A stretch of DNA of 64,000 bases. Source: Octopus sinensis (lineage: Eukaryota). This document shows, one piece after another, positions 3,360 to 61,845 of this stretch. Below the pieces are notes generated by a model. That model was not told the origin of the DNA. It ran no database searches and saw nothing but the letters and a program-made list of their open reading frames with translations. The translations under genes and the position numbers were made by a program. Location: assembly GCF_006345805.1 (NCBI RefSeq), contig NC_043012.1, positions 46,686,001-46,750,000 of the forward strand, written 5' to 3'. Position 1 is the stretch's first letter. The number at the start of each line of letters is the position of its first letter.

Positions 3360-3423
3360 AAAACGGTAAGATAACAAAAGAAAGAAAGAGACCTCAATAT
3401 TATGTAACTAGAGGAAATTTATC

Positions 3424-4375
3424 TATACAATATGTTACATTACTCGGTAGTCAAGATAAAATCTGAGTTTCAGATGCCGAAGTGGAAATCCACAACACCA
3501 TCTCTTCAGTTATCTGGCTATTTGAAAACGTTATGAAAAAATACCGTTAAATAAAGGGAAATTACTCTGTTATAACTCTGCTTGCCTGCGTACTTATACA
3601 TCGCTCGCATTTTTCGTCATAAAAATTATATAAAAATACATAAAAAATATATAAAAAATATATAAAAATATATAAATTCTTCTTGGGACATAACATAGAA
3701 AGTATGTTCTATCTGTTTTCTTTAGGGGACCAAAAACGTAACAGAAACTTAGTCACACGTGGGCATGATCCGAAAAGCTCTGTCCTTGTATTTAGACATG
3801 TAGTACGGTCTAAGCTGCTTTTCCAGATAAGCCATCTCTCCATGTCGCATAGACCGCACCTTCCGCTGCCGTTAGTATAGGGCTTACATCTGGCCAATTA
3901 TAACATACAATGGAAGATTTTGGCCAGATGTAAGCCCTATACTAACGGCAGCGGAAGGTGCGGTCTATGCGACATGGAGAGATGACTTATCTGGAAAAGC
4001 AGCTACATGTCTAAATACAAGGACAGAGCTTTTCGGATCATGCCCACATGTGACTAAGTTTCTGTTACGTTTTTGGTCCCCTGAAGAAAACAGATAGAAC
4101 ATGCTTTCTATGTTATGTCCCAAGAAGAATTTATATATTTTTATATATTTTTTATATATTTTTTATGTATTTTTATATAATTTTTATGACGAAAAATGCG
4201 AGCGATGTATAAGTACGCAGGCAAGCAGAGTTATAACAGAGTAATTTCCCTTTATTTAACGGTATTTTTTCATAACGTTTTCAAATAGCCAGATAACCGA
4301 AGAGATGGTGTTGTGGATTTCCACTTCGGCATCTGAAACTCAGAGTTTTATCTTGACTACCGAGTAATGTAACAT

Positions 4376-4383
<8 letters not shown>
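3424..4383. mobile_element. Inverted pair (~470-bp arms) of PLE 3' end / pseudo-LTR
   Basis: 3424-3897 is the reverse complement of 3919-4383. The arms encode the PLE endonuclease C-terminus YNIQWKILARCKPYTNGSGRCGLCDMERWLIW...LNTRTELFGSCPRVTKFLL, followed by a hammerhead-like motif. Confidence 0.8.
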
Positions 4384-4415
<32 letters not shown>

Positions 4416-4782: not shown

Positions 4783-5411
4783 GTTAAGGAATAATTGTTT
4801 GCCCATGTTGCGTGTGGAGTTTATGAATGAATGATTCAACAAATAGAAGAATCTAAGGGTAGGTAATTGGTTATCGTTATTATTGGGGACAAAGGAAACA
4901 ATTGTTCATCTTTCTGTAGTGGGGGATATATACACAAGCAAAATTCAAAGACTAGTGTGATGGGGAAAATATGTACAGTGTTGGGTATATTATCGTGTAT
5001 TAAAACATGGCAGAAGGGAAAAACTGAAATGTTTAAAAGTCAACAACCAAGTTATAACTGACATCTATCATATACCAACGAACTCGAAGCGATATCTCCT
5101 TTTTAGCTAATGCCACCCGAAACACATCAAAATATATATCCCCTTTATTTTGACAAAAAGGATGTGCACCATAGTGTCTAATAGAACTATGTGGGACGTT
5201 CATATTCAAGACATCAGAACAAGACTAATTGAAAGACAATATCCACCATCACTTATAGATGATGGAATTAAGCGTGCCAGGAAGTTAGACATAAAAACAT
5301 TAAGACAACAAAACATAACAAATACTGTATACATCAAGTCACAACCCTAGAATCAATGAGGCATACAACAATATTGTTCAAAATCTTCCTTTACTAACTA
5401 GAAACCCCAAA

Positions 5412-5927
5412 ATGAACGGCATCCTGAAAGCACATAAATTCATCAAATGCAAAAAGCAACACAGATCCCTTAAGAAACTTTTAACAAATGAAAAGTTTTA
5501 TGCAACAACCACGAAACCAGCATTTAAACTATGTGGACGTCCAAGTTTTCATACAAGCCACAACCTACTTGAAGGCTCGGATTTCCTTTTCAAACGAGAG
5601 AGGTTCACAGTTAAAACCAACTTCACTTGTGCCTCGGAGAATCTAATTTATGTAATAATCTGCTTCGTATGTGGGCATCACTATATAGGACAGACTAGTA
5701 TGACACTGAGACGGAGAACGACTCTACATAAAGAGCAGATCCGATTCCCGCAATACAGACAGATTCCTTTAAGTGCACACCTAGAAAGATGTGCACGTAA
5801 CATCAAAACAAATTTCACAGTTTTCCCCTTCTACCAGTGCAAAGATACAATTTCTTTACAAGAACTTTTGAATAAAGAAAATTTATACATCGAAAAATAC
5901 AGAAAACGTCTAAATATTCATGCATAA
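5412..5927 (+). pseudogene. PLE GIY-YIG endonuclease domain (remnant ORF)
   Basis: NFTCASENLIYVIICFVCGHHYIGQTSMTLRRRTTLHKEQI...HL...KENLYIEKY...LN carries the NLIY/YIGQT/R/E/N motif set. Confidence 0.85.
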
Positions 5928-6182
5928 CCAACTTTGATCTCTATACATATGCTATCACTGTACATACTTCTCGCCACCACTGTAGTGTTTGAATTTTATT
6001 GTGTATATGTATATTCCTCCCCTACCGAAAGATGATCAATTATCTCCCCTATCCACAGTAATAACAATTACCAATTACCTCCCCTTAGATTTTTCTGCTT
6101 GTTTCATCATTCATTTATATGCTCCACACAAAACATGGACAAAAATTTGTCTTAAGGAAATACGTATTTAAAGAAATTTTAA

Positions 6183-9236: not shown

Positions 9237-9591
9237 ATAAATATTAGGGAATAAATCCAAATTTACAGGGAAAAAATCAGATTTAGGATTAAATCGATTT
9301 TATAGTAAAATATTATAAAATATTATTCGAGACAAAACCACTATTTTGCAAAACAAACAAGGAAAGACTTAATTAATACATAAAATTTTAATAAATAGTC
9401 AAAAAAACCGTGGACTTCCAATAATTCAGTGTCAAATTTTTGACACTGAATTATTGGAAGTCCACCTGAAGATTGTCGATCAAGACAAGAAACGATTGTA
9501 GTGGCGGTTTTTTTGACTATTTATTAAAATTTTATGTATTAATTAAGTCTTTCCTTGTTTGTTTTGCAAAATAGTGGTTTTGTCTCGAATA

Positions 9592-9601
<10 letters not shown>
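9237..9601. mobile_element. PLE-type terminal-repeat fold-back cassette
   Basis: Inverted arms 9314-9410 and 9505-9601 enclose a 27-bp perfect hairpin and a hammerhead motif. Related sequence lies at 42676-43145. Confidence 0.65.
9462..9504 (+). ncRNA. Minimal type I hammerhead ribozyme motif
   Basis: ccac-CTGAAGA-ttgtc gatcaa gacaa-GAAA-c gatt g-TA-gtgg. All core nucleotides are canonical and the GUA site ends at 9500. Confidence 0.7.
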
Positions 9602-9651
<50 letters not shown>

Positions 9652-9689
9652 CATTGATATATATATACATATGTGTATATGTATATATG

Positions 9690-9747
<58 letters not shown>

Positions 9748-9841
9748 TAAGGGCTCCTAAATAAAGATGCCGAGTGCTGGGAACACAAAAAGGGGATGAA
9801 TTTATCGAGAGTGAAAATCAAAAACGTTTACCGATAACTTT

Positions 9842-9923
9842 AACAACTCGTACCGCGGTTTCTGCTTCTTTCTAGCAAAACACAGAATATGTTTGCTAAG
9901 GCCAGCTTCATCAGCGAGTTGCC
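9842..9923 (-). ncRNA. Type I hammerhead motif, array copy 1
   Basis: Reverse complement: ggcaactcg-CTGATGA-agct...agca-GAAA-c cgcg g-TA-cgagttgtt. Confidence 0.75.
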
Positions 9924-10285
9924 TGAATTTAATCGAGGTCTGCAGCGATGTGGGGCTATACGTTAAACCCGACTACTAGCAGATCTTAACTTTTCAAATC
10001 TCTGCGCAGACGCAAAATTTACGCGGGCATGCCGGGAAGAATTTTACGAATAAATTCATCATGTAGTATGCGAATATAAACAAGAAGGGTAGTAATATTA
10101 TTTACTACCAGGTGCCCAGCACAAAAGACGAATTAGTCATAAGACAAAAATATTATTCATATAGAAAAATATTATTCATGTAGTTATACAATTAAGGGCT
10201 CCTAAATAAAGATGCCGAGTGCTGGGAACACAAAAAGGGGATGAATTATCGAGAGTGAAAATCAAAAACGTTTACCGATAACTTT

Positions 10286-10367
10286 AACAACTCGTACCGC
10301 GGTTTCTGCTTCTTTCTAGCAAAACACAGAATATGTTTGCTAAGGCCAGCTTCATCAGCGAGTTGCC
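10286..10367 (-). ncRNA. Type I hammerhead motif, array copy 2
   Basis: Same motif as copy 1. Confidence 0.75.
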
Positions 10368-10730
10368 TGAATTTAATCGAGGTCTGCAGCGATGTGGGGC
10401 TATACGTTAAACCCGACTACTAGCAGATCTTAACTTTTCAAATCTCTGCGCAGACGCAAAATTTACGCGGGCATGCCGGGAAGAATTTTACGAATAAATT
10501 CATCATGTAGTATGCGAATATAAACAAGAAGGGTAGTAATATTATTTACTACCAGGTGCCCAGCACAAAAGACGAATTAGTCATAAGACAAAAATATTAT
10601 TCATATAGAAAAATATTATTCATGTAGTTATACAATTAAGGGCTCCTAAATAAAGATGCCGAGTGCTGGGAACACAAAAAGGGGATGAATTTATCGAGAG
10701 TGAAAATCAAAAACGTTTACCGATAACTTT

Positions 10731-10812
10731 AACAACTCGTACCGCGGTTTCTGCTTCTTTCTAGCAAAACACAGAATATGTTTGCTAAGGCCAGCTTCAT
10801 CAGCGAGTTGCC
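10731..10812 (-). ncRNA. Type I hammerhead motif, array copy 3
   Basis: Same motif as copy 1. Confidence 0.75.
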
Positions 10813-11311
10813 TGAATTTAATCGAGGTCTGCAGCGATGTGGGGCTATACGTTAAACCCGACTACTAGCAGATCTTAACTTTTCAAATCTCTGCGCAGAC
10901 GCAAAATTTACGCGGGCATGCCGGGAAGAATTTTACGAATAAATTCATCATGTAGTATGCGAATATAAACAAGAAGGGTAGTAATATTATTTACTACCCT
11001 TTTTGTGTTCCCAGCACTCGGCATCTTTATTTAGGAGCCCTTAATTGTATAACTACATGAATAATATTTTTCTATATGAATAATATTTTTGTCTTATGAC
11101 TAATTCGTCTTTTGTGCTGGGCACCTGGTAGTAAATAATATTACTACCCTTCTTGTTTATATTCGCATACTACATGATGAATTTATTCGTAAAATTCTTC
11201 CGGCATGCCCGCGTAAATTTTGCGTCTGCGCAGAGATTTGAAAAGTTAAGATCTGCTAGTAGTCGGGTTTAACGTATAGCCCCACATCGCTGCAGACCTC
11301 GATTAAATTCA

Positions 11312-11393
11312 GGCAACTCGCTGATGAAGCTGGCCTTAGCAAACATATTCTGTGTTTTGCTAGAAAGAAGCAGAAACCGCGGTACGAGTTGTT
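11312..11393 (+). ncRNA. Type I hammerhead motif, array copy 4
   Basis: Stem I is 11312-11320/11385-11393, CTGATGA is 11321-11327, GAAA is 11373-11376, and stem III is the ACCGCGGT palindrome. Predicted cleavage is after A11384. Confidence 0.75.
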
Positions 11394-11756
11394 AAAGTTA
11401 TCGATAAACGTTTTTGATTTTCACTCTCGATAAATTCATCCCCTTTTTGTGTTCCCAGCACTCGGCATCTTTATTTAGGAGCCCTTAATTGTATAACTAC
11501 ATGAATAATATTTTTCTATATGAATAATATTTTTGTCTTATGACTAATTCGTCTTTTGTGCTGGGCACCTGGTAGTAAATAATATTACTACCCTTCTTGT
11601 TTATATTCGCATACTACATGATGAATTTATTCGTAAAATTCTTCCCGGCATGCCCGCGTAAATTTTGCGTCTGCGCAGAGATTTGAAAAGTTAAGATCTG
11701 CTAGTAGTCGGGTTTAACGTATAGCCCCACATCGCTGCAGACCTCGATTAAATTCA

Positions 11757-11838
11757 GGCAACTCGCTGATGAAGCTGGCCTTAGCAAACATATTCTGTGT
11801 TTTGCTAGAAAGAAGCAGAAACCGCGGTACGAGTTGTT
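11757..11838 (+). ncRNA. Type I hammerhead motif, array copy 5
   Basis: Same motif; predicted cleavage after A11829. Confidence 0.75.
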
Positions 11839-12200
11839 AAAGTTATCGGTAAACGTTTTTGATTTTCACTCTCGATAAATTCATCCCCTTTTTGTGTTCC
11901 CAGCACTCGGCATCTTTATTTAGGAGCCCTTAATTGTATAACTACATGAATAATATTTTTCTATATGAATAATATTTTTGTCTTATGACTAATTCGTCTT
12001 TTGTGCTGGGCACCTGGTAGTAATAATATTACTACCCTTCTTGTTTATATTCGCATACTACATGATGAATTTATTCGTAAAATTCTTCCCGGCATGCCCG
12101 CGTAAATTTTGCGTCTGCGCAGAGATTTGAAAAGTTAAGATCTGCTAGTAGTCGGGTTTAACGTATAGCCCCACATCGCTGCAGACCTCGATTAAATTCA

Positions 12201-12282
12201 GGCAACTCGCTGATGAAGCTGGCCTTAGCAAACATATTCTGTGTTTTGCTAGAAAGAAGCAGAAACCGCGGTACGAGTTGTT
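12201..12282 (+). ncRNA. Type I hammerhead motif, array copy 6
   Basis: Same motif; predicted cleavage after A12273. Confidence 0.75.
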
Positions 12283-12644
12283 AAAGTTATCGATAAACGT
12301 TTTTGATTTTCACTCTCGATAAATTCATCCCCTTTTTGTGTTCCCAGCACTCGGCATCTTTATTTAGGAGCCCTTAATTGTATAACTACATGAATAATAT
12401 TTTTCTATATGAATAATATTTTTGTCTTATGACTAATTCGTCTTTTGTGCTGGGCACCTGGTAGTAAATAATATTACTACCCTTCTTGTTTATATTCGCA
12501 TACTACATGATGAATTTATTCGTAAAATTCTTCCGGCATGCCCGCGTAAATTTTGCGTCTGCGCAGAGATTTGAAAAGTTAAGATCTGCTAGTAGTCGGG
12601 TTTAACGTATAGCCCCACATCGCTGCAGACCTCGATTAAATTCA

Positions 12645-12728
12645 GGCAACTCGCTGATGAAGCTGGCCTTAGCAAACATATTCTGTGTTTTGCTAGAAAG
12701 AAGCAGAGAAACCGCGGTACGAGTTGTT
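12645..12728 (+). ncRNA. Type I hammerhead motif, array copy 7 (extra GA before GAAA)
   Basis: Reads aagcagaGAAAccgcggta; predicted cleavage after A12719. Confidence 0.6.
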
Positions 12729-13091
12729 AAAGTTATCGGTAAACGTTTTTGATTTTCACTCTCGATAAATTCATCCCCTTTTTGTGTTCCCAGCACTCGG
12801 CATCTTTATTTAGGAGCCCTTAATTGTATAACTACATGAATAATATTTTTCTATATGAATAATATTTTTGTCTTATGACTAATTCGTCTTTTGTGCTGGG
12901 CACCTGGTAGTAAATAATATTACTACCCTTCTTGTTTATATTCGCATACTACATGATGAATTTATTCGTAAAATTCTTCCCGGCATGCCCGCGTAAATTT
13001 TGCGTCTGCGCAGAGATTTGAAAAGTTAAGATCTGCTAGTAGTCGGGTTTAACGTATAGCCCCACATCGCTGCAGACCTCGATTAAATTCA

Positions 13092-13173
13092 GGCAACTCG
13101 CTGATGAAGCTGGCCTTAGCAAACATATTCTGTGTTTTGCTAGAAAGAAGCAGAAACCGCGGTACGAGTTGTT
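13092..13173 (+). ncRNA. Type I hammerhead motif, array copy 8
   Basis: Same motif; predicted cleavage after A13164. Confidence 0.75.
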
Positions 13174-13567
13174 AAAGTTATCGGTAAACGTTTTTGATTT
13201 TCACTCTCGATAAATTCATCCCCTTTTTGTGTTCCCAGCACTCGGCATCTTTATTTAGGAGCCCTTAATTGTATAACTACATGAATAATATTTTTCTATA
13301 TGAATAATATTTTTGTCTTATGACTAATTCGTCTTTTGTGCTGGGCACCTGGTAGTAAATAATATTACTACCCTTCTTGTTTATATATATATATATATAT
13401 ATATACCCATATATGTGTATGCATGTATATATTATATATATGCATATATATATATATATATATATATCCGTAATAATGAAGGGTGAAATTAATTAATTTG
13501 GAATAATTATCAATTACACCAAGTAGTCTTCGGCATGTAAAAGCCTTGTTCGAGGAAAATTTAAGTA

Positions 13568-13958
13568 ATACTAAGCAATAAAGGGTTTAGCAACGAATTG
13601 CCTTACCACAGACCGAATTTAGAAATAGCAGTCAAAGAGTTATAGCTATTTCTTCTACTAAAAAGGGAGATCTGAAGAGAAAAGAAGTTTGGGTAAGGTA
13701 GAATTATTTAATATTTAATTCTTATGCTTTCCTAAAAACTTGATTTCGAAACGTGCGTCCGTAGATAACTTAAAATTGTATGATAGATTGCCGTCAATTC
13801 ATTCTCTCTTACCTGTTTGTGTCTGCCTTCCAATTGATGTGTTTTTTTACTGAGATCTCCCTTTTTAGTAGAAGAAATAGCTATAACTCTTTGACTGCTA
13901 GTTCTAAATTCGGTCTGTGGTAAGGCAATTCGTTGCTAAACCCTTTATTGCTTAGTAT
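13568..13958. repeat. ~106-bp inverted repeat around a degenerate hammerhead-like core (probable PLE pseudo-LTR)
   Basis: Arms are 13568-13673 and 13853-13958. The spacer has CTGAAGA-gaaa...tttc-GAAAC-gtgc-GTC, but stem I does not pair. Confidence 0.55.
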
Positions 13959-14063
13959 ATATATATATATATATATATACATATGTATATGTATAATATA
14001 TATATATATACTTTGATACTTTGATAGGTTTCGGCCATTATTGGCCCAGGCCATGTCTAACTT

Positions 14064-15429: not shown

Positions 15430-16365
15430 GCCAGTCATTGGCAGGCATAGTTTATTAAGGCTTTCCATCAATTTCCATCTACTTTGAGCGACATCCCGCA
15501 GTAAGCACGAATCATACGGTGATAAGACGTTCTTGGTCGTTCCCTCTCGCGTTTTCCACCTTGTAGGGTGTGAAGCAGCAGGCACTGTTGATAGCATCCA
15601 TTGGCTGTGTGTCGCAGTTGATGGACAATCCATCTCAGCTGAGGTTCTTTTATCCGTGTGCTCATTTGCATTTAGTCGGCCAGTTGGTACAATATATCAC
15701 TGGAAACGTGGTTACTATAGGATATCTGATATATTCTCCCCAGGTTCCTTATGGGAAAAGTGTTCACCGTGGCCTTTTACCAATTTGTATTAATTACATG
15801 TCTCGCATCCATATGTAAAAGTCGGAAGACATGGAGTTTTGTACATCTTTATCTTCGTTGTTGGCTTCATGTCAGACCACCAGAGGTGTTGAAGCTGCGA
15901 CATTGCTCCACATGCCGCTCTCTTTCTGTCTATGATGTCACTACTTGAGTTGTAAGAGAAATCAGTCAGTTGATCCAACGAAACTGGATTTATCATCCCT
16001 AGATAACTGCTTTCCACTTGCCAGGACGTCTGCTTTTTGTGTGTTCATATTAATAGTGATGTAGTCTGTCTTCAATTCGTTTATTTCTAGCCCGACAGTT
16101 TCTGCTGCTCGCATGACACGATTTAGTGCTTCTATGAGGCTAGGAGCAAAGAGAACAATGTCATCTGCAAATGAAAGACAGGTCAATATAAGAATTCCCT
16201 CTTGCATACGGGTTGCAGCTTTCATCACATGATCATACACACCAAAAACAGATGAGGTGCTTAAGGCATCAACTTGCAAAATCCCACACCGAGGTGTGAA
16301 GTCAGTGTTTGCCATTAACAAGGACATATGCTCAAGTATGGAGGAGAAGCACCTCAATCAGCTTT
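15430..16365 (-). mobile_element. Decayed RTE-clade LINE reverse transcriptase, 3' part
   Basis: RCGILQVDALSTSSVFGVYDHVMK...LSFADDIVLFA...AETVGLEINELKT...PTFTYGCET. Confidence 0.8.
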
Positions 16366-26409: not shown

Positions 26410-27420
26410 ATTTGTATGTTTTATGTTTGTATTTTCCTGCATATAATTACATATCTAGACATGCTCATATACATTTAAATAATAAACTTCTGGAAAGTTT
26501 TATAGATTTTTACAGTTCCAGTGTTGGATTGGAACTGCAGTCTTCGAATTAGCTTTCTGCTTCCTAGTTTTGAAAAGCCTAATTTCTCAAGATTGGTATT
26601 AAGGCAGTGTGTTACATATCCCAGGAACCCAATAATTACAGGTATAAACCTGAACTTGTAATCTGGATTGAGTAACTTCAGATTTCTCAATTGTTCAGTA
26701 TAAGTGTTTTCCTTTTCACTGATCTCTATCTTTATGTTAACATCTTCTGGGCAGCTAATTTCCACAAATGTGCACAGTTTCTCTTCTCTATCACAAATTA
26801 TTATATGATGTCTGTTGTGCTTACATTTTATTGAGGTCTTCACTGGTACATTCCACCACTATTCTTTTTCATTATGAGTGGCCATGACTTCTACCATATT
26901 GTGGATTTTGTTTCTTTGTCGTCGGGATTATCCTACCGACGGATTTCATTATAGAATGTCCTAGTTACAACGTGATGTCTCATCGGTAGATAATACCATG
27001 ATGACACTTTCAGACAACTGCTTATGATGTGGGTGATATCTTCAGTGTTAAATCCACAAAGTCTGCATCAGTTGTCACATTTTACGGTTTTTCCTGCGTC
27101 TCTATCCCTTTTGTGCATCAGGTACTTCGTTGATATTTCGTGTTCCTGGATTGCAAATGCATACCCTTCAAAGTGGGAGGTAGTAATCCGGCTGTTCGTC
27201 CATGCTTTGATCATCGATGTTACTTTCATGGCGGAGCTTTCTATCCATGCATAGTCTTCTAACATCTAGGCTCATTCTTTCATCTGATAATGTTTCTTTA
27301 ACAGCTTTTAATACCGTATCTAGTGGGTTTCTTTTACTCACTTTGGTAGAGAATACTCTCTCCTCGAAAGAGCTCTTCAAAACCAAAGTTTCTTTTTCTC
27401 GGAAAATTTCCATAAGGGCA
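26410..27420 (-). mobile_element. 5'-truncated R4/Dong-like non-LTR retrotransposon (CCHC finger and RLE)
   Basis: FEGYAFAIQEHEISTKYL...CRLCGFNTEDITHIISSC...CKHNRHHIIICDREEKLCTFVEISCP...IPVIIGFLGYV; the 3' end runs into (CATA)n. Confidence 0.8.
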
Positions 27421-31390: not shown

Positions 31391-31790
31391 CTTTACTCTT
31401 TTACTCTTTTACTTTTTTGACTGCGGCCATGCTGGAGCAAACCTTTAATCGAGCAACTCGACCCCGGGACTTATTCTTTTGTAAGCCCAGTACTTATTCT
31501 ATCGGTCTCTTTTGCCGAACCGCTAAGTAACGGGGACATAAACACACCAGCATCGGTTATCAAGCAATGCTAGGGGGACAAACACAGACACACAAACACA
31601 CACACGCATATATATATACATATATACGACGGGCTTCTTTCAGTTTCCGTCTACCAAATCCACTCACAAGGCTTTGTTCGGCCCGAGGCTATAGTAGAAG
31701 ACACTTGCCCAAGGTGCCACGCAGTGGGACTGAACCCGGAATCATGTGGTTGGTAAACAAGCTACTTACCACACAGCCACTCCTGCGCCT
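31391..31790 (-). mobile_element. tRNA-derived SINE (major family in this window)
   Basis: Head aggcgcaggagtggctgtgtggtaag...ccgggttcagtcccactgcgtggcacc and a (AGAGTAAA)-like tail. Confidence 0.85.
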
Positions 31791-32039
31791 ATATCTGTAT
31801 CTGTTAACTTTTGAAGAAGTTCAAGTTTGAGTGGAATTTTTGGAGGTTACGGTCAAGTACCTCTAGAGTTCCGTGATATGACAGTGGGCTCATCCCAAAC
31901 AATGAGGCATATTAGTTGGAAAACTGTTGCTATTGCAGTGTTTTTAGAAATCTTGCACGTTTGAGATTATTTCATTGCAGGGTTTAGAGGTAGCTTGAAC
32001 TTGGAATGAGCAGTTCTTCACCCATTGAGCAGCGAAGTT

Positions 32040-32490
32040 GCAATACCAGATGAAGGTTACATTTTATTTCCTCCCATTTAAGATTGCAGGTGAAATTGAC
32101 AAAGATCTGGTTTTCCATGTCTTGATATATGTCATAGTAACCTTGTGTTCGTTGGTGCATATATCGAGGACCACCTGTGAAAGATTGTGGGAGGATTATG
32201 AATTGCCTCGTGTTTTGAATACCACCATCTGTCCTCAGAGCATCTTGGACATGAACATAATATTTAGCACTTAGCTCGTTTTGATTTCTACGAATGTAGA
32301 GACGCTGCTGACTCACAACTTTAGCATATACCTTAACCAGGTATTGCTGAAATAGATCCCGATACATGTTTAATTGTTTTGATTGTTCTTCTCTTAACAT
32401 CGTTTGGTAAAAATAGAAGTCCTTTGACGACAACTTTTTGTTTGTGATTGGCTATCCTGTTGCAGGTTCAATCTGTGGATTACTGAAATA
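32040..32490 (-). mobile_element. Helitron Rep (Helitron_like_N) remnant
   Basis: KKLSSKDFYFYQTMLR...DLFQQYLVKVYAKV...LYIRRNQNEL...IILPQSFTGGPRYMHQR...FVNFTCNLKWEEI. Confidence 0.85.
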
Positions 32491-39125: not shown

Positions 39126-39190
39126 ATGTATAAATGTATGCGCGTGTATATATATATATATACGTAAACACACATACATACATGCATGTG

Positions 39191-39528
39191 GGTGTGTGCT
39201 AAGTAGCTTGCTTAGCAACCACATGGTTCTGGGTTCAGTCCCACTGCATGGCACCTTGGGAAAGTGTCTTCTACTAAAGCCTGACTCCGACCAAAGCCAT
39301 GTGAGTAGATTTTGTAGACGGATACTGAATGAAGCCTGTCATATCTATATGTATGCGTCTGTGTCTTTTCCCCACCACCTTCGCTTGACAACCGATGCTG
39401 GTATGTTTATGTCCCCATAACTTAGCAGTTTGGCAAATGATAACAATAGAATAAGTCCTGCGGGTGATTTGTTTGACTAAAGGTGGTGCTCCAGCATGGC
39501 TGCAGCCAAATGACTGAAACAACTGAAA
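39191..39528 (+). mobile_element. tRNA-derived SINE
   Basis: Homologous to 53299-53745. Confidence 0.75.
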
Positions 39529-41433: not shown

Positions 41434-41755
41434 AGGCGCAGAAGCGGCTATGTATTAGGAAGCTCGCTTCCCAATCACATGGGATTTTGAAAACGAAACT
41501 GAAAGAAGCCCGTCGTACATATGTGTGTGCATTTGTGCTCGTGTGTGTGAGTGTTTGTTTGTCTGTATCTGTCCCCCTCACCATCGCGTGACAACAGAAG
41601 ATGGTATGATTACCTCCCTCTAAATGAGGGGGCGGCAAAAGACACCGCTAAAATAAATACTAGGCTTACAAAGAATAAGTCTCAGGGTCGATTTCTTCGA
41701 CTAAAGGCGTTTTTTCAGGATAGCCGCATTTAGATGAGTGAAACAAGTAATATAA
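41434..41755 (+). mobile_element. tRNA-derived SINE, internally deleted
   Basis: aggcgcagaagcggct...gaaactgaaagaagcccgtcg...acaaagaataagtc. Confidence 0.7.
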
Positions 41756-42334: not shown

Positions 42335-42675
42335 GCAACTTAGAAACAAGGGCAAAAGAAAAATTCTAATGCCAAATATGCCGAAAATAGACATAATCGT
42401 CAATAACCATACAATTTATCGCTATAAGCACGCGTCTCGAAACAAGTCAACAGAAATTTCTAAAAAATTCCGTTATTATCGCGTGGGTCCCAATTTCAGA
42501 ATTAATTCATATGAATTTTCTCCTCGTCAGCGATAAATACGTTAAAAAATAAATTAAATACTTACTTATACCCATGGATAATAACGGAATTTTTTAGAAA
42601 TTTCTCTTGGCTTGCTTCGAGACGCATGCTTATTAGATATAAATTATATATATATATAATATTATATATATATAT

Positions 42676-43145
42676 ATTATATTAGATTAGGATAAAACCA
42701 CTATTAGGCAAATCAAACAATGAAAAACTTAAGCCAATACATAAAATTATTAATTTATATTATTTTAAATATATATCAAAAGTATAAAAGTTTAATAAGA
42801 TAATGAGTAAACACTACGATCGTTTCATGGCTAAACCTCGCCAAGATAAATATTTCAATTACCTGAAGATTGACTGTAACCATAACTCGAATTACTACAA
42901 ATTGGACAGCCATGAAACGATCGTAGTGTTTTATTCATTATCTTTTATTAAACTTTTAATACTTTTGATATATATTTAAAATAATATAAATTAATAAATT
43001 TTATGTATTGGCTTAAGTTTTTCATTGTTTGATTTGCCTAATAGTGGTTTTATCTCTAATTTAATATAATATAATACTTTACTATAAAATTGGATTCAAT
43101 CCTAAATCTGATTTTTCCCTGTAAGTTTGGATTTATTCCCTAATA
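42676..43145. mobile_element. PLE-type terminal-repeat fold-back with a degenerate hammerhead
   Basis: Arms are ~42676-42832 and 42908-43070. CTGAAGA at 42863 is followed by GAAAC-GATC-GTA at 42914-42925. The tail is related to 9237-9400. Confidence 0.65.
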
Positions 43146-43153
43146 TTTTATTA

Positions 43154-43189
<36 letters not shown>

Positions 43190-52699: not shown

Positions 52700-53115
52700 T
52701 TTACTTGTCATTACCTTTTCAATCATTAGATTACGGCCATACTGGGGCACCGCATTGACTAGATTTTATTTGAATGAATGAACCACTGTACTTATTTTTT
52801 AAAGCCTGGTACGTTTTCTATCGGCAACTTTTGTCGAACTTTTAGGTTACGGGAACGTAAACACGCCTGCACCTGATTGCCAAGCATTTGTGGTGAGAGG
52901 ACAAAGACAGACAAAAAGATGCCCAAACGTACAGACACACACACACACGCACGCAAATTTACACAGGTGCTTCTTTCCGTGTCCGTCTACCAAATCCACT
53001 CACAAACCTTTGGTCGGCCCAAGGCCAAAGTTGAAGACATTTGCCCAAAGTGCCGTGCTGTGGGACGGAACCCGGATCCATTTGGTTGGGAAGTAAGCTT
53101 CTTACCATACAGCCT
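52700..53115 (-). mobile_element. tRNA-derived SINE, decayed
   Basis: Reverse-complement homology to 53299-53745. Confidence 0.7.
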
Positions 53116-53298: not shown

Positions 53299-53471
53299 AG
53301 GCGCAGGAGTGGCTGTGTGATAAGTAGCTTGCTTACCAACCACAGGGTTCCGGGTTCAGTCCCACTGCGTGATACCTTAGGCAAGTGTCTTTTACTATAG
53401 CCTCGTGGCGACCGAAAGCCTTGTGAGTGGATTTGGTAGACGGAAACTGAAAGACGCCCGCCATATATAGG

Positions 53472-53523
<52 letters not shown>

Positions 53524-53745
53524 ATATGTTTGTGTGTCTGTGTTTGTCCCCGCAACATCACTTGATAACCGATGCTGGTGTGTTTACGTCCCCGTAACCT
53601 AGCGGTTCGGCAAAAGAGACCGATGGAATAAGTACTAAGATTACAAAGAATAAGTCCTGGGGTCGGTTTGCTCGCCTAAAGGCGGTGCTCCAGCATGGCC
53701 GCAGTCAAATGACTGAAACAAGTAAAAGATAAAGAGTAAGAGAGA
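53299..53745 (+). mobile_element. tRNA-derived SINE, near full length
   Basis: Head aggcgcaggagtggctgtgtgataagtagcttg...ccgggttcagtcccactgcg and tail gtaaaagataaagagtaagag. Confidence 0.85.
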
Positions 53746-60663: not shown

Positions 60664-61363
60664 GCTCCCCTGGTTAACCTTGAACAACGAAAGTGTACTC
60701 AAAATCCCTTTCACGTGTCAGACTGCAAGGTTTTATAAGATTACCTTCCGTAATGTGTCAGCTATAGTGGCTTTTGCTTGTGGGCCATTTGGCAGCGATT
60801 TACTTTAGCTCAGCAAGTGATCATGTGCATTTTACTTTCTTTGTTGCTCGAAAGACGCTAGTATCTCCTGACGTACAGTTTGGAATATGTGGACAAGATT
60901 GCGGTGTGTACATTTGTTTTTATCAGAAACATCGCAGGAGAGACACATAACATATTGATTGTTCTGCTCTCAATATGCAATTTCAATTTATAACTGCAAA
61001 AATATATCTTCGGTATATCCTGTGAAATTATTTGGACAAAGATTCAAAATTATGTAATATCAAGTATAAGTTACTCTTAACGAGAGGAGCTTAAGACGCC
61101 AATGACATCTTCATTTTTTTTAATCGTTTCTTGATATTTTATAATGCTCAGAGAGAACTACATGGTCATATTGTGCATCTAAATGATTTGTCATAGAGTT
61201 CCTTCCCTGTGTTGGTGTTTTGCTATGCAACTTTTTAGCAAAACTTATGTAGAAACATTTTAACGTGGGATTCGTCTAAGATATTGTAATTTATGCTACA
61301 ATAACTTGTAGTATTAAAGATACTTCGATATTATGTAAATAGAGGAATTTATCTGTAAATATA

Positions 61364-61560
61364 ATATGTTTCAGTTATTCGGCAGCCATGATTAAACTCC
61401 GAGTTTCGTATGTCGGGGCTGAAACCGACGCCGGCATCTCTTCAGTTATCTGGCGATCAAACTATAATGGCCCGATAACTGAAGAGATGCCGGCGTGGGT
61501 TTCCGCCCTGATATCCGAAATTCAGAGTTTTATCATGGATGTCGAATAATTGTCACATAT
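61364..61560. repeat. ~87-bp inverted repeat in which each arm carries a hammerhead-like motif (PLE pseudo-LTR type)
   Basis: gataa-CTGAAGA-gatg...-GAAA-(c/t)tc(g/a)ga-GTT-t(t/a)atc on both strands; related to the motif in 3424-4383. Confidence 0.6.
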
Positions 61561-61845
61561 TATATATATATACATACATACATGTGTGTGTCTGTATGTC
61601 TGTGTGTGGTTAGACACCAATAAAGGATACGAATATATATGTGAATACTAGTGGTAACAGGGTCCTATCAAGACGATATCTAATTAGCTGCACATTTTAC
61701 TTGTCTGACTCCCGCTAACTGTAATTACGTGTTTGAAATTCGCACTACTCTGGAATGAATCAATAATTATATTCCCGTATGTATAACTTATATATATATA
61801 TATGTATGTATGTATGTATGTGTGTGTGTAAGTATGTAATATACC

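What the first reader, a model, noticed from the sequence alone, without database searches (positions are those of the whole stretch)
9740..13386. Retrozyme-like tandem array: eight ~445-nt non-coding monomers, each with a type I hammerhead ribozyme
Seen in the sequence: near-identical 444-447-bp units with no ORF. Each contains ggcaactcg-CUGAUGA-[long stem II with a tagcaaa/tttgcta arm]-GAAA-C CGCG G-UA-cgagttgtt. That gives a 9-bp stem I (two G-U pairs), a canonical core, a short stem III with the palindrome ACCGCGGU, and a GUA cleavage triplet. Predicted cuts at 11384, 11829, 12273, 12719 and 13164 would release unit-length ~445-nt RNAs. Established knowledge: non-LTR retrozymes (newt satellite 2, Schistosoma Sm-alpha, cnidarian and mussel families) are tandem repeats with minimal type I hammerheads. 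Their palindromic stem III allows dimeric cleavage, they yield linear and circular monomer RNAs, and they are thought to be mobilised by Penelope-like elements. Inference: this is a young cephalopod retrozyme family with a long monomer, and I do not know of a description of it. Caveat: the pair closing stem II is A-A, with GCU/AGC pairing just inside, so activity is not guaranteed.
Basis: partly seen in the sequence, partly recalled or inferred. Interest (0 to 1): 0.92.

Follow-up and report, generated by a model that had tools for sequence, protein, structure and literature searches.

The report
Self-cleaving RNA repeat (retrozyme) array
A 3.6-kb block of near-identical 445-bp non-coding repeats, each carrying a hammerhead self-cleaving RNA motif, sits inside a (TA)n microsatellite in octopus-like DNA; it looks like a new family of a known class of small mobile elements (retrozymes) rather than a new kind of system.

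Summary
The repeats and the hammerhead (HHR) motif are real. TRF finds period 444 at 99% identity. The full motif occurs 8 times; 0 of 20,000 shuffled units reproduce its quality. One correction: this is not a single head-to-tail array. Block 9740-10998 (2.8 units, 3 HHRs) is on the minus strand and block 10997-13386 (5.4 units, 5 HHRs) is on the plus strand. Their 5' ends meet at a 2-nt overlap, and their 3' ends run into (TA)n at TATA microhomologies.

Alone, a monomer does not form helix III. A two-unit transcript folds, unconstrained, into the classic double hammerhead, with trans helix III ACCGCGGU at pair probability 0.92 or higher. The units are non-coding and 38% GC.

The head-to-head layout, 5' truncation and (TA)n target match published Penelope-like-element insertion footprints. 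A PLE endonuclease remnant lies 4 kb away and is 77% identical to Octopus bimaculoides DNA.

Against: no Rfam hammerhead model matches, even at E<=10. The base of helix II is non-canonical. No related copy was found anywhere, so there is no covariation, copy-number or expression evidence.

Verdict: probable non-LTR retrozyme, a new member of a known kind, of moderate interest.

The parts
9598..9743 (.). Left (TA)n microsatellite abutting the array (presumed half of the target site)
   Evidence: TRF period 2, 73 copies; sequence
9740..10998 (-). Left block: 2.8 units with sense on the minus strand. It starts at unit position ~187 at the centre and ends at unit position 111 (...TTGTATA) in (TA)n
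   Evidence: TRF period 444, 99%; unit parsing 259+445+444+111 nt; end mapping
9842..9923 (-). HHR copy (stem I 5' strand to stem I 3' strand); A17 at 9851
10286..10367 (-). HHR copy; A17 at 10295
10731..10812 (-). HHR copy; A17 at 10740
10997..10998 (.). Head-to-head junction: a 2-nt CC/GG overlap shared by the 5' ends of both blocks. It is not mirror-symmetric (unit position 187 against 58)
   Evidence: TRF boundaries
10997..13386 (+). Right block: 5.4 units with sense on the plus strand. It starts at unit position 58 and ends at unit position 222 (...GTTTATAT) in (TA)n
   Evidence: TRF period 444, 99%; units 388+445+444+446+445+222 nt; end mapping
11312..11393 (+). HHR copy; cut predicted after 11384
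11757..11838 (+). HHR copy; cut predicted after 11829
12201..12282 (+). HHR copy; cut predicted after 12273
12645..12728 (+). Variant HHR copy with an AG insertion between helix II and G12 (probably impaired); cut site after 12719
13092..13173 (+). HHR copy; cut predicted after 13164
13382..13467 (.). Right (TA)n microsatellite abutting the array
   Evidence: TRF; sequence
5105..6068 (+). Context, not part of the array: a degenerate Penelope-like element remnant. The ORF 5412-5927 encodes a GIY-YIG endonuclease, the class of enzyme proposed to mobilise such arrays. It has no sequence similarity to the unit
   Evidence: Pfam PF01541, E 6.9e-6; homologues include an O. bimaculoides protein; 76.6% nt identity to O. 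bimaculoides CM046603.1; monomer blastn negative

Best explanation
This is one insertion of a non-autonomous, non-LTR (Penelope-like-element-dependent) retrozyme in an octopod-like genome.

Shown by sequence or computation:
- The unit is 445 nt, non-coding and 38% GC, with one plus-polarity type I hammerhead.
- Helix III is too weak to form in a monomer.
- In any transcript holding two units, the two ACCGCGGU palindromes pair in trans. The stem I strands swap partners, giving a double hammerhead with both catalytic cores left open.

Inferred steps:
- A host RtcB-type tRNA ligase circularises them.
- The circle, holding a single HHR, is protected from re-cleavage.
- A PLE reverse transcriptase/GIY-YIG endonuclease breaks a (TA)n tract. 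Both exposed 3'-OH ends anneal to UAUA stretches in circular or multimeric retrozyme RNA (unit positions 111 and 222).
- Both ends are extended over several unit lengths. The two cDNAs meet and are joined at a 2-nt microhomology.
- The result is the observed layout: (TA)n, then 2.8 units pointing left, then 5.4 units pointing right, then (TA)n.
For: - Array and motif. Chance is excluded (0/20,000).
- Non-coding. GC 38%. No tRNA-like part. HHR on one polarity only.
- Double hammerhead: it is both the unconstrained MFE and the centroid of the 540-nt two-HHR transcript (-144.7 kcal/mol, z -3.84). Pair probabilities are trans helix III 0.92-1.0, outer stem I 0.81-1.0, inner stem I 0.72-0.84 and cis helix III 0.0. 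Two 82-nt minimal HHRs cofold the same way.
- In the monomer, stem I closes the other ~370 nt.
- All four operational criteria of Li et al. 2026 are met: TRF repeat, HHR descriptor, HHR MFE below -5 kcal/mol, and at least 2 consecutive units.
[quoted passage not shown] A mismatch at the base of helix II is tolerated in the axolotl HHR_Amex2, which cleaves efficiently as a dimer.
- Insertion footprint: both 3' ends lie in (TA)n at TATA microhomology, the 5' ends are truncated at different unit positions, and there is a 2-nt junction. PLEs are described as making tandem plus inverted 5'-truncated insertions, with a bias for microsatellites including (TA)n. Cervera and de la Pena 2020 proposed DNA-target-primed copying of circRNA into tandem cDNA.
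- PLE presence: a PLE endonuclease remnant lies in the window. O. vulgaris has 336 recently active PLE insertions.
Against: - No Rfam hammerhead model reports the motif, at gathering threshold or at E<=10, even on a 116-nt slice.
- The base of helix II is non-canonical. It reads either as an A-A mismatch, or as G-C flanked by an extra A on each side. Only 3 Watson-Crick pairs follow before a 5x6 internal loop. Their predicted probability is only 0.55-0.66.
- Stem I is 9 bp without the loop 1 of canonical type I HHRs, so no canonical loop-loop contact is evident.
- The isolated 82-nt HHR fold is 3 kcal/mol above the MFE.
- The eight copies are ~99% identical, so there is no covariation.
- No other copy exists in the window, in 34 kb of O. 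bimaculoides, or in metagenome, viral or protein collections. Dispersal, meaning mobility, is therefore unproven.
- The nearby PLE remnant is degenerate and unrelated in sequence to the unit.
- There are no expression or cleavage data.
Confidence: 0.68

Rival explanations
1. An ordinary local satellite or tandem duplication whose hammerhead-like motif is catalytically dead: a relic or a near-miss. It would expand by unequal exchange or replication slippage, not through RNA.
For: No Rfam HHR hit. Non-canonical 10.1/11.1 and a weak proximal helix II. Only one locus seen. No relatives found. PLE min-HHRs themselves cleave poorly in vitro.
Against: The complete core, a 9-bp stem I and a palindromic helix III are not obtained in 20,000 shuffles. 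The double-hammerhead fold is the MFE and the centroid. Unequal exchange does not explain the head-to-head inverted blocks, the non-mirrored 5' truncations, or both 3' ends sitting in (TA)n at TATA microhomology.
Confidence: 0.17
2. Not an independent retrozyme, but a multimerised pseudo-LTR (terminal repeat) of an autonomous Penelope-like element that lost or never carried its ORF at this site.
For: PLE pLTRs carry type I HHRs with palindromic helix III and form partial tandems plus inverted 5'-truncated copies. Xenopus retrozymes are sister to PLE pLTRs, so the boundary between the two is gradual.
Against: There is no RT/EN ORF between or beside the units. Eight consecutive units with no coding insert fit the retrozyme definition. 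The unit has no similarity to the PLE remnant in the window or to the PLE-bearing loci L011 and L012. Stem I of 9 bp is unlike the 4-5 bp of PLE min-HHRs.
Confidence: 0.1
3. The inverted arrangement, and perhaps the copy number, is an assembly artefact such as a chimeric or fold-back long read. The real locus would then be a simple head-to-tail array.
For: Three of the six differences between units are 1-nt homopolymer-length changes typical of long-read consensus errors. Other perfect palindromes occur nearby, for example 9314-9410/9505-9601 at 100%.
Against: The junction is not mirror-symmetric: unit position 187 meets position 58, and the arms are 1259 and 2390 bp. A fold-back read artefact would be symmetric. 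Both outer ends independently terminate in (TA)n.
Confidence: 0.05

Closest known systems
Non-LTR retrozymes of invertebrates (Mytilus galloprovincialis ~350-390 bp repeats; Acropora 220-240 bp), Cervera & de la Pena 2020, PMC7229834
   Same: Short tandem, non-coding, low-GC repeats with one type I HHR per unit. The mussel HHRs also lack the archetypal loop1-loop2 nucleotides. Both are proposed to act as circRNA intermediates mobilised by PLE-type machinery.
   Different: Invertebrate HHRs were reported to cleave efficiently as single motifs, with a 2-bp or longer helix III. Here helix III forms only in trans. The unit (445 nt) is at the upper edge of the range. Helix II is 45 nt and bipartite. 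No expression data exist here.
Amphibian satellite 2 / axolotl retrozymes (HHR_Amex1, HHR_Amex2; 330-350 bp)
   Same: A very weak helix III capped by a palindromic loop, so that dimeric (double-hammerhead) cleavage is required. Amex2 has a U-U mismatch at the base of helix II, analogous to the A-A here, and still cleaves well as a dimer.
   Different: The amphibian HHRs keep short helices I and II with conserved loop-loop contacts (Amex1). Copy number is ~10^5 per genome there and unknown here. The sequences are unrelated.
Minimal hammerheads of Penelope-like element pseudo-LTRs (Cervera & de la Pena 2014, PMC4209133)
   Same: Palindromic 15.2-16.2/loop 3, an extra nucleotide between A9 and 10.1, G10.1-C11.1 (under one reading), a larger-than-usual helix II, and dimer-dependent, often weak, cleavage. 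They escape standard descriptors. The insertion style is the same: tandem plus an inverted 5'-truncated copy in microsatellites.
   Different: PLE HHRs flank an RT-EN ORF and have a 4-5 bp stem I. Here there is no ORF, stem I is 9 bp, and there is an additional unpaired A between 11.1 and G12.
Plant LTR retrozymes (PMC4918200)
   Same: Non-autonomous retroelements whose HHRs release a circRNA intermediate.
   Different: They have type III HHRs inside LTRs, PBS/PPT, 4-bp TSDs, GC above 55%, and Gypsy-dependent mobilisation. None of these applies here.

Membership tests
Hammerhead ribozyme, type I | Conserved core: C3 U4 G5 A6 N7 G8 A9 ... G12 A13 A14, A15.1-U16.1, and H17 not G | tested here: met
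   CUGAUGA ... GAAA-CCGCGG-UA in all 8 copies
Hammerhead ribozyme, type I | Three helices around the core, with helices II and III closed and helix I open (type I topology) | tested here: met
   Stem I is 9 bp. Helix II is GCU/AGC plus a distal 7-11 bp arm. Helix III is 2 bp in cis or 8 bp in trans
Hammerhead ribozyme, type I | G10.1-C11.1 pair directly adjoining A9 and G12 | tested here: inconclusive
   It reads either as A10.1-A11.1 or as G-C flanked by one extra A on each side. The 5' extra nucleotide is documented and the 3' one is not. A U-U precedent exists in Amex2
Hammerhead ribozyme, type I | Loop 1 / loop 2 tertiary contact (helix I ~6 bp, helix II ~4 bp) | tested here: not met
   Stem I is 9 continuous bp. 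Helix II opens into a 5x6 internal loop. There are no canonical loop nucleotides. This is the same situation as in mussel retrozyme and PLE min-HHRs
Hammerhead ribozyme, type I | Match to Rfam hammerhead covariance models (the Rfam 15 library was scanned) | tested here: not met
   No hit at gathering threshold on the window, at E<=10 on 9500-13700, or on the 116-nt slice 11295-11410
Hammerhead ribozyme, type I | Mg2+-dependent self-cleavage 3' of H17 | not testable with these tools
   Needs in vitro transcription of monomer and dimer constructs
Non-LTR retrozyme | Tandem repeats of ~150-450 bp, from dimers to large multimers | tested here: met
   Period 444-446, in 2.8 + 5.4 copies; published range
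Non-LTR retrozyme | A type I HHR in every unit, with at least 2 consecutive complete HHRs | tested here: met
   5 consecutive on the plus strand and 3 on the minus strand; criterion
Non-LTR retrozyme | Non-coding, low GC (<45-50%), no LTR/PBS/PPT | tested here: met
   Longest ORF is 39 aa in normal units. GC is 38%. The array abuts (TA)n directly with no terminal repeats. PBS and PPT were not searched for specifically
Non-LTR retrozyme | Dispersed at multiple genomic loci (evidence of mobility) | not testable with these tools
   There is only one locus in the 64-kb window. No cephalopod genome is searchable by DNA. Indirect routes gave nothing
Non-LTR retrozyme | Expressed as unit-length linear and circular RNA | not testable with these tools
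   No transcriptome access
Non-LTR retrozyme | Co-occurrence with Penelope-like elements in the genome | tested here: met
   GIY-YIG PLE remnant at 5105-6068; PLEs recently active in O. vulgaris; co-occurrence rule
PLE pseudo-LTR hammerhead | HHR-bearing repeats flank an RT-GIY-YIG ORF | tested here: not met
   No ORF within or between units. No similarity to the PLE sequences in hand

The most novel reading that the evidence does not exclude
The locus preserves the footprint of a single retrozyme integration, and that footprint shows how animal retrozymes move. Both 3'-OH ends of a break in a (TA)n tract would have primed reverse transcription on circular or multimeric retrozyme RNA at internal UAUA microhomologies (twin-primed, rolling-circle target-primed reverse transcription). 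In addition, its hammerhead would be a functional structural variant: a bipartite 45-nt helix II, an unpaired A on each side of G10.1-C11.1, and obligate dimer action. Rfam models do not see this variant, so cephalopod retrozymes would have been systematically missed.
Probability: 0.3. Interest if true: 0.6.

Novelty: new member of a known kind. Interest (0 to 1): 0.42.

Why it matters
Animal retrozymes are a recently recognised source of abundant small circular RNAs. How they are copied back into DNA is still a hypothesis. If this family is real, it extends retrozymes to cephalopods, whose genomes are TE-rich and have recently active Penelope-like elements.

It would also supply a very young insertion, with units ~99% identical. 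Its ends and its internal head-to-head junction can be read base by base. They fit target-primed copying of a circular or multimeric RNA at a (TA)n break.

Finally, it shows that covariance-model annotation (Rfam) can miss dimer-dependent hammerheads with long helix II insertions. If the motif turns out to be inactive, the locus is just a small satellite of little consequence.

Tried and rejected
1. Rfam scans, run three ways: whole window at gathering threshold; 4.2 kb at E<=10; 116 nt at E<=10. None gave a hammerhead hit. The hits that did appear (mir-297 and similar) are (TA)n hairpin noise.

2. Finding relatives:
- I translated the longest stop-free frame of the unit (56 aa, spanning the HHR) and searched the 5.8-billion-protein index. 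No candidate was found.
- The same frame against 1.84 billion representatives gave one spurious 26-residue match, E 4e-5.
- Two exact-pattern scans of metagenome contigs gave 0 hits.
- The viral-contig scan gave 10 hits. All have stem I 0-3 bp and helix II 0-2 bp, so they are chance matches.

3. A search with the Helitron ORF, to name the organism, found nothing.

4. The monomer against the rest of the window, against 34 kb of O. bimaculoides and against a 21-kb ENA locus gave no similarity.

5. Covariation analysis is impossible. The eight copies differ by 1 substitution, 3 homopolymer indels and 1 AG insertion.

6. Fold z-scores of the monomer do not distinguish the strands: -2.9 for plus and -3.2 for minus. 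They are not evidence for a functional RNA on their own.

7. Chance origin of the motif is rejected.

8. A tRNA or SINE origin is rejected, since ARAGORN finds nothing.

9. The HHR-like hits at 3460-3509(-) and 61479-61529(+) are probably not hammerheads, because the GAAA would be sequestered in an AUCUGA/UCAGAU hairpin.
Full report
OBSERVATION

Tandem Repeats Finder reports two adjoining arrays with period 444 and 99% matches: 9740-10998 (2.8 copies) and 10997-13386 (5.4 copies). Their consensus units are reverse complements of each other. (TA)n tracts lie at 9598-9743 and 13382-13467. The repeat finder confirms that the two blocks are inverted relative to each other, with arms up to 702 nt at 98% and 513 nt at 100% complementarity.

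None is expected in 100 shuffles of the window. On the minus strand they are 10740, 10295 and 9851. Cut-to-cut units are 444-446 nt.

The copies differ by one substitution, three single-base homopolymer indels, and one AG insertion in the HHR at 12654-12719. No normal unit has an ORF above 39 aa. GC is 38%.

It is two blocks placed head to head.

IS THE HAMMERHEAD MORE THAN CHANCE?

I wrote a descriptor for the motif. It requires CUGANGA; a helix II of at least 3 bp, allowing a 1x1 mismatch or a 5' bulge at its base; GAAA; A15.1...U16.1; H17; and a stem I of at least 5 bp. The real unit scores stem I = 9, helix II = 3 and a palindromic loop 3, on one polarity only.

Of 20,000 dinucleotide shuffles of the unit, scanned as circular units on both strands, one had any relaxed hit. 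None had stem I of 7 or more, or a palindromic loop 3. The motif is not a coincidence.

ANATOMY

- Stem I: GGCAACUCG/CGAGUUGUU, 9 bp, two of them G-U.
- Core: CUGAUGA.
- Helix II: 45 nt. It consists of an A, then GCU/AGC, then a 5x6 internal loop (GGCCU/GAAAGA), then UAGCAAA/UUUGCUA extended by four more pairs, then an A.
- GAAA.
- Helix III: A-U and C-G over a CGCG loop, within the palindrome ACCGCGGU.
- Cleavage triplet: GUA.

The base of helix II can be read in two ways.
Axolotl HHR_Amex2 has a U-U mismatch at the same place and cleaves efficiently as a dimer.
[quoted passage not shown] This reading adds an unpaired A before G12 that I did not find described in the papers I read.

No loop1-loop2 contact of the canonical kind is apparent.

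FOLDING

The isolated 82-nt HHR drawn by hand has -19.3 kcal/mol, against an MFE of -22.3. In the 445-nt monomer, stem I forms and closes the other ~370 nt, but helix III does not form. Monomer fold z-scores are -2.9 for the plus strand and -3.2 for the minus strand, so they are uninformative about strand.

The decisive result comes from a 540-nt transcript containing two HHRs (window 11307-11846). Folded without constraints, it gives the classic double hammerhead as both MFE and centroid.
- The 5' stem I strand of HHR1 pairs with the 3' stem I strand of HHR2.
- The two ACCGCGGU palindromes form an 8-bp helix III in trans.
- The inner stem I strands pair with each other.
- Both helices II form, and both cores stay open.

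The energy is -144.7 kcal/mol with z -3.84. Pair probabilities are 0.92-1.0 for trans helix III, 0.81-1.0 for outer stem I, 0.72-0.84 for inner stem I, 0.55-0.66 for the proximal GCU/AGC, and 0.0 for cis helix III. Two minimal HHRs cofold the same way.

This is the behaviour described for newt, axolotl and PLE hammerheads. Cleavage occurs in multimers, and the monomeric circle is protected.

NEGATIVE TEST

No Rfam 15 hammerhead model reports the motif. This holds at gathering threshold on the whole window, at E<=10 on 4.2 kb, and at E<=10 on a 116-nt slice. I attribute this to the ~37-nt insertion in helix II, the non-canonical 10.1/11.1 and the minimal helix III. That is an inference and I could not test it. 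PLE-type minimal HHRs are known to escape standard descriptors.

INSERTION ARCHITECTURE

- The right block starts at unit position 58 and ends at position 222. Its last bases, ...GTTTATAT, merge into (AT)n where the unit would continue TCGC.
- The left block, read in sense on the minus strand, starts at position ~187. It ends at position 111, ...TTGTATA, merging into (TA)n where the unit would continue ACTAC.
- The two 5' ends meet at 10997-10998 with a 2-nt CC/GG overlap.

Both 3' ends are therefore attached to the microsatellite through 4-5 nt TATA microhomologies at different unit positions. Both 5' ends are truncated at different positions in the centre.

This is what twin priming from the two 3'-OH ends of a broken (TA)n tract would produce on a template without a fixed 3' end, meaning a circular or multimeric RNA. 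It matches the published description of PLE insertions: partial tandems, an adjacent inverted 5'-truncated copy, and a bias for microsatellites, with (TA)n named for Naiads. Cervera and de la Pena proposed exactly such DNA-target-primed copying of circRNA into tandem cDNA.

The junction is not mirror-symmetric, which argues against a fold-back read artefact.

CONTEXT AND ORGANISM

An ORF at 5412-5927 is a GIY-YIG endonuclease (Pfam, E 6.9e-6). Its homologues are PLE-like, carrying HTH_animal plus GIY-YIG downstream of an RT in locus L012.

The only named homologue is from Octopus bimaculoides. At DNA level, window 5105-6068 is 76.6% identical to O. bimaculoides chromosome CM046603.1, and another repeat (31416-31779) is 83.8% identical. 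An octopod, or at least cephalopod, origin is thus supported but the species is not determined.

O. vulgaris is reported to have 336 recently active PLE insertions from 31 families. The PLE remnant in the window is unrelated in sequence to the unit.

WHAT COULD NOT BE DONE

No cephalopod genome or transcriptome can be searched by DNA with these tools. Every indirect route gave nothing: translated frames of the unit against protein collections, exact-pattern scans of metagenome and viral contigs, and sampling of O. bimaculoides loci. Copy number, dispersal, conservation of the HHR relative to the rest of the unit, transcription, circularity and catalysis are therefore untested.

COMPARISON AND NOVELTY

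The locus meets all sequence-level criteria for a non-LTR retrozyme.
- Cervera and de la Pena 2020: 150-450 bp tandem units, a type I HHR, non-coding, low GC, no LTRs.
- Li et al. 2026: TRF repeat, HHR descriptor, MFE below -5 kcal/mol, at least 2 consecutive units.

In mechanism it is closest to the dimer-dependent amphibian retrozymes. In HHR detail and insertion style it is closest to PLE min-HHRs.

The 445-nt unit is at the top of the published range, not beyond it. I found no paper describing retrozymes in cephalopods. However, 235 Rfam hammerhead hits were already listed for the giant squid genome. I therefore rate it a new member of a known kind.

VERDICT

This is a probable young retrozyme insertion (confidence ~0.68). 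The main rival is an inert satellite with a dead hammerhead (~0.17). Interest is moderate. Its most useful aspect is the cleanly readable integration footprint.

Noticed in passing
window 9314-9601 (centre 9462-9504), and window 42668-43087: A fold-back element with 97-nt, 100% complementary arms (9314-9410/9505-9601) lies directly left of the same (TA)n tract. Its centre holds a second, different minimal hammerhead-like motif: CCAC-CUGAAGA-UUGUC GAUCAA GACAA-GAAA-CGAUUG-UA-GUGG. A relative ~80-84% identical sits at 42668-43087, between (AT)n tracts 42637-42684 and 43157-43186. It keeps the CUGAAGAUUG and GAAACGAU(C/U)GUAGU boxes while the helix II region differs in length (13 vs 41 nt). This looks like a PLE-derived, (TA)n-targeting non-autonomous family. 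Rfam does not see it.
   Followed up: partly
window 13568-13958: Another fold-back (116-nt arms, 96% complementary, 159 nt between them) lies between the right (TA)n (13382-13467) and a further (TA)n (13956-14010). The (TA)n region from 9.3 to 14.0 kb therefore appears to have been hit repeatedly by different inverted-repeat insertions. No convincing hammerhead was found in this one.
   Followed up: partly
window 3400-4390, and 61331-61570: A ~1-kb palindrome (3400-3560 against 4246-4390, 97%) contains duplicated inverted ORFs at 3683-3880(+) and 3965-4123(-). A related palindromic copy lies at 61331-61570. Both carry a hammerhead-like string, GAUAA-CUGAAGA-...-GAAAC-, at 3460-3509(-) and 61479-61529(+). 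It is probably not a ribozyme, because the GAAA would be sequestered in an AUCUGA/UCAGAU hairpin.
   Followed up: partly
window 5105-6068: A degenerate Penelope-like element remnant. The ORF 5412-5927 has a GIY-YIG domain. The segment is 76.6% identical at nucleotide level to O. bimaculoides chromosome CM046603.1, in a gene annotated there as 'myb-like protein D', which looks like a TE-derived mis-annotation.
   Followed up: partly
window 31984-32433 (-), 15962-16357 (-), 26475-26843 (-): Other transposon debris is present: a Helitron_like_N fragment (Pfam, E 1.2e-17), a reverse-transcriptase fragment (RVT_1, below the Pfam cut-off), and an unassigned 122-aa ORF resembling retrotransposon C-termini.
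   Followed up: no
window 31416-31779, 39189-39511, 41544-41708, 52931-53114, 53310-53710: A ~350-bp interspersed repeat is present at least five times in the window, in both orientations. It is 75-84% identical to O. bimaculoides locus L011 3593-3940. It is probably a SINE-like family shared among octopods.
   Followed up: no
window 9740-13386: A transcript reading through both blocks would fold back into ~1.26 kb of near-perfect double-stranded RNA. That could be a trigger for small-RNA silencing of the family.
   Followed up: no
whole window: Microsatellite density is extreme: TRF returned 153 rows in 64 kb, mostly TA, CA and ATAC/ATCT-type tetranucleotides. GC is ~30-41%.
   Followed up: no
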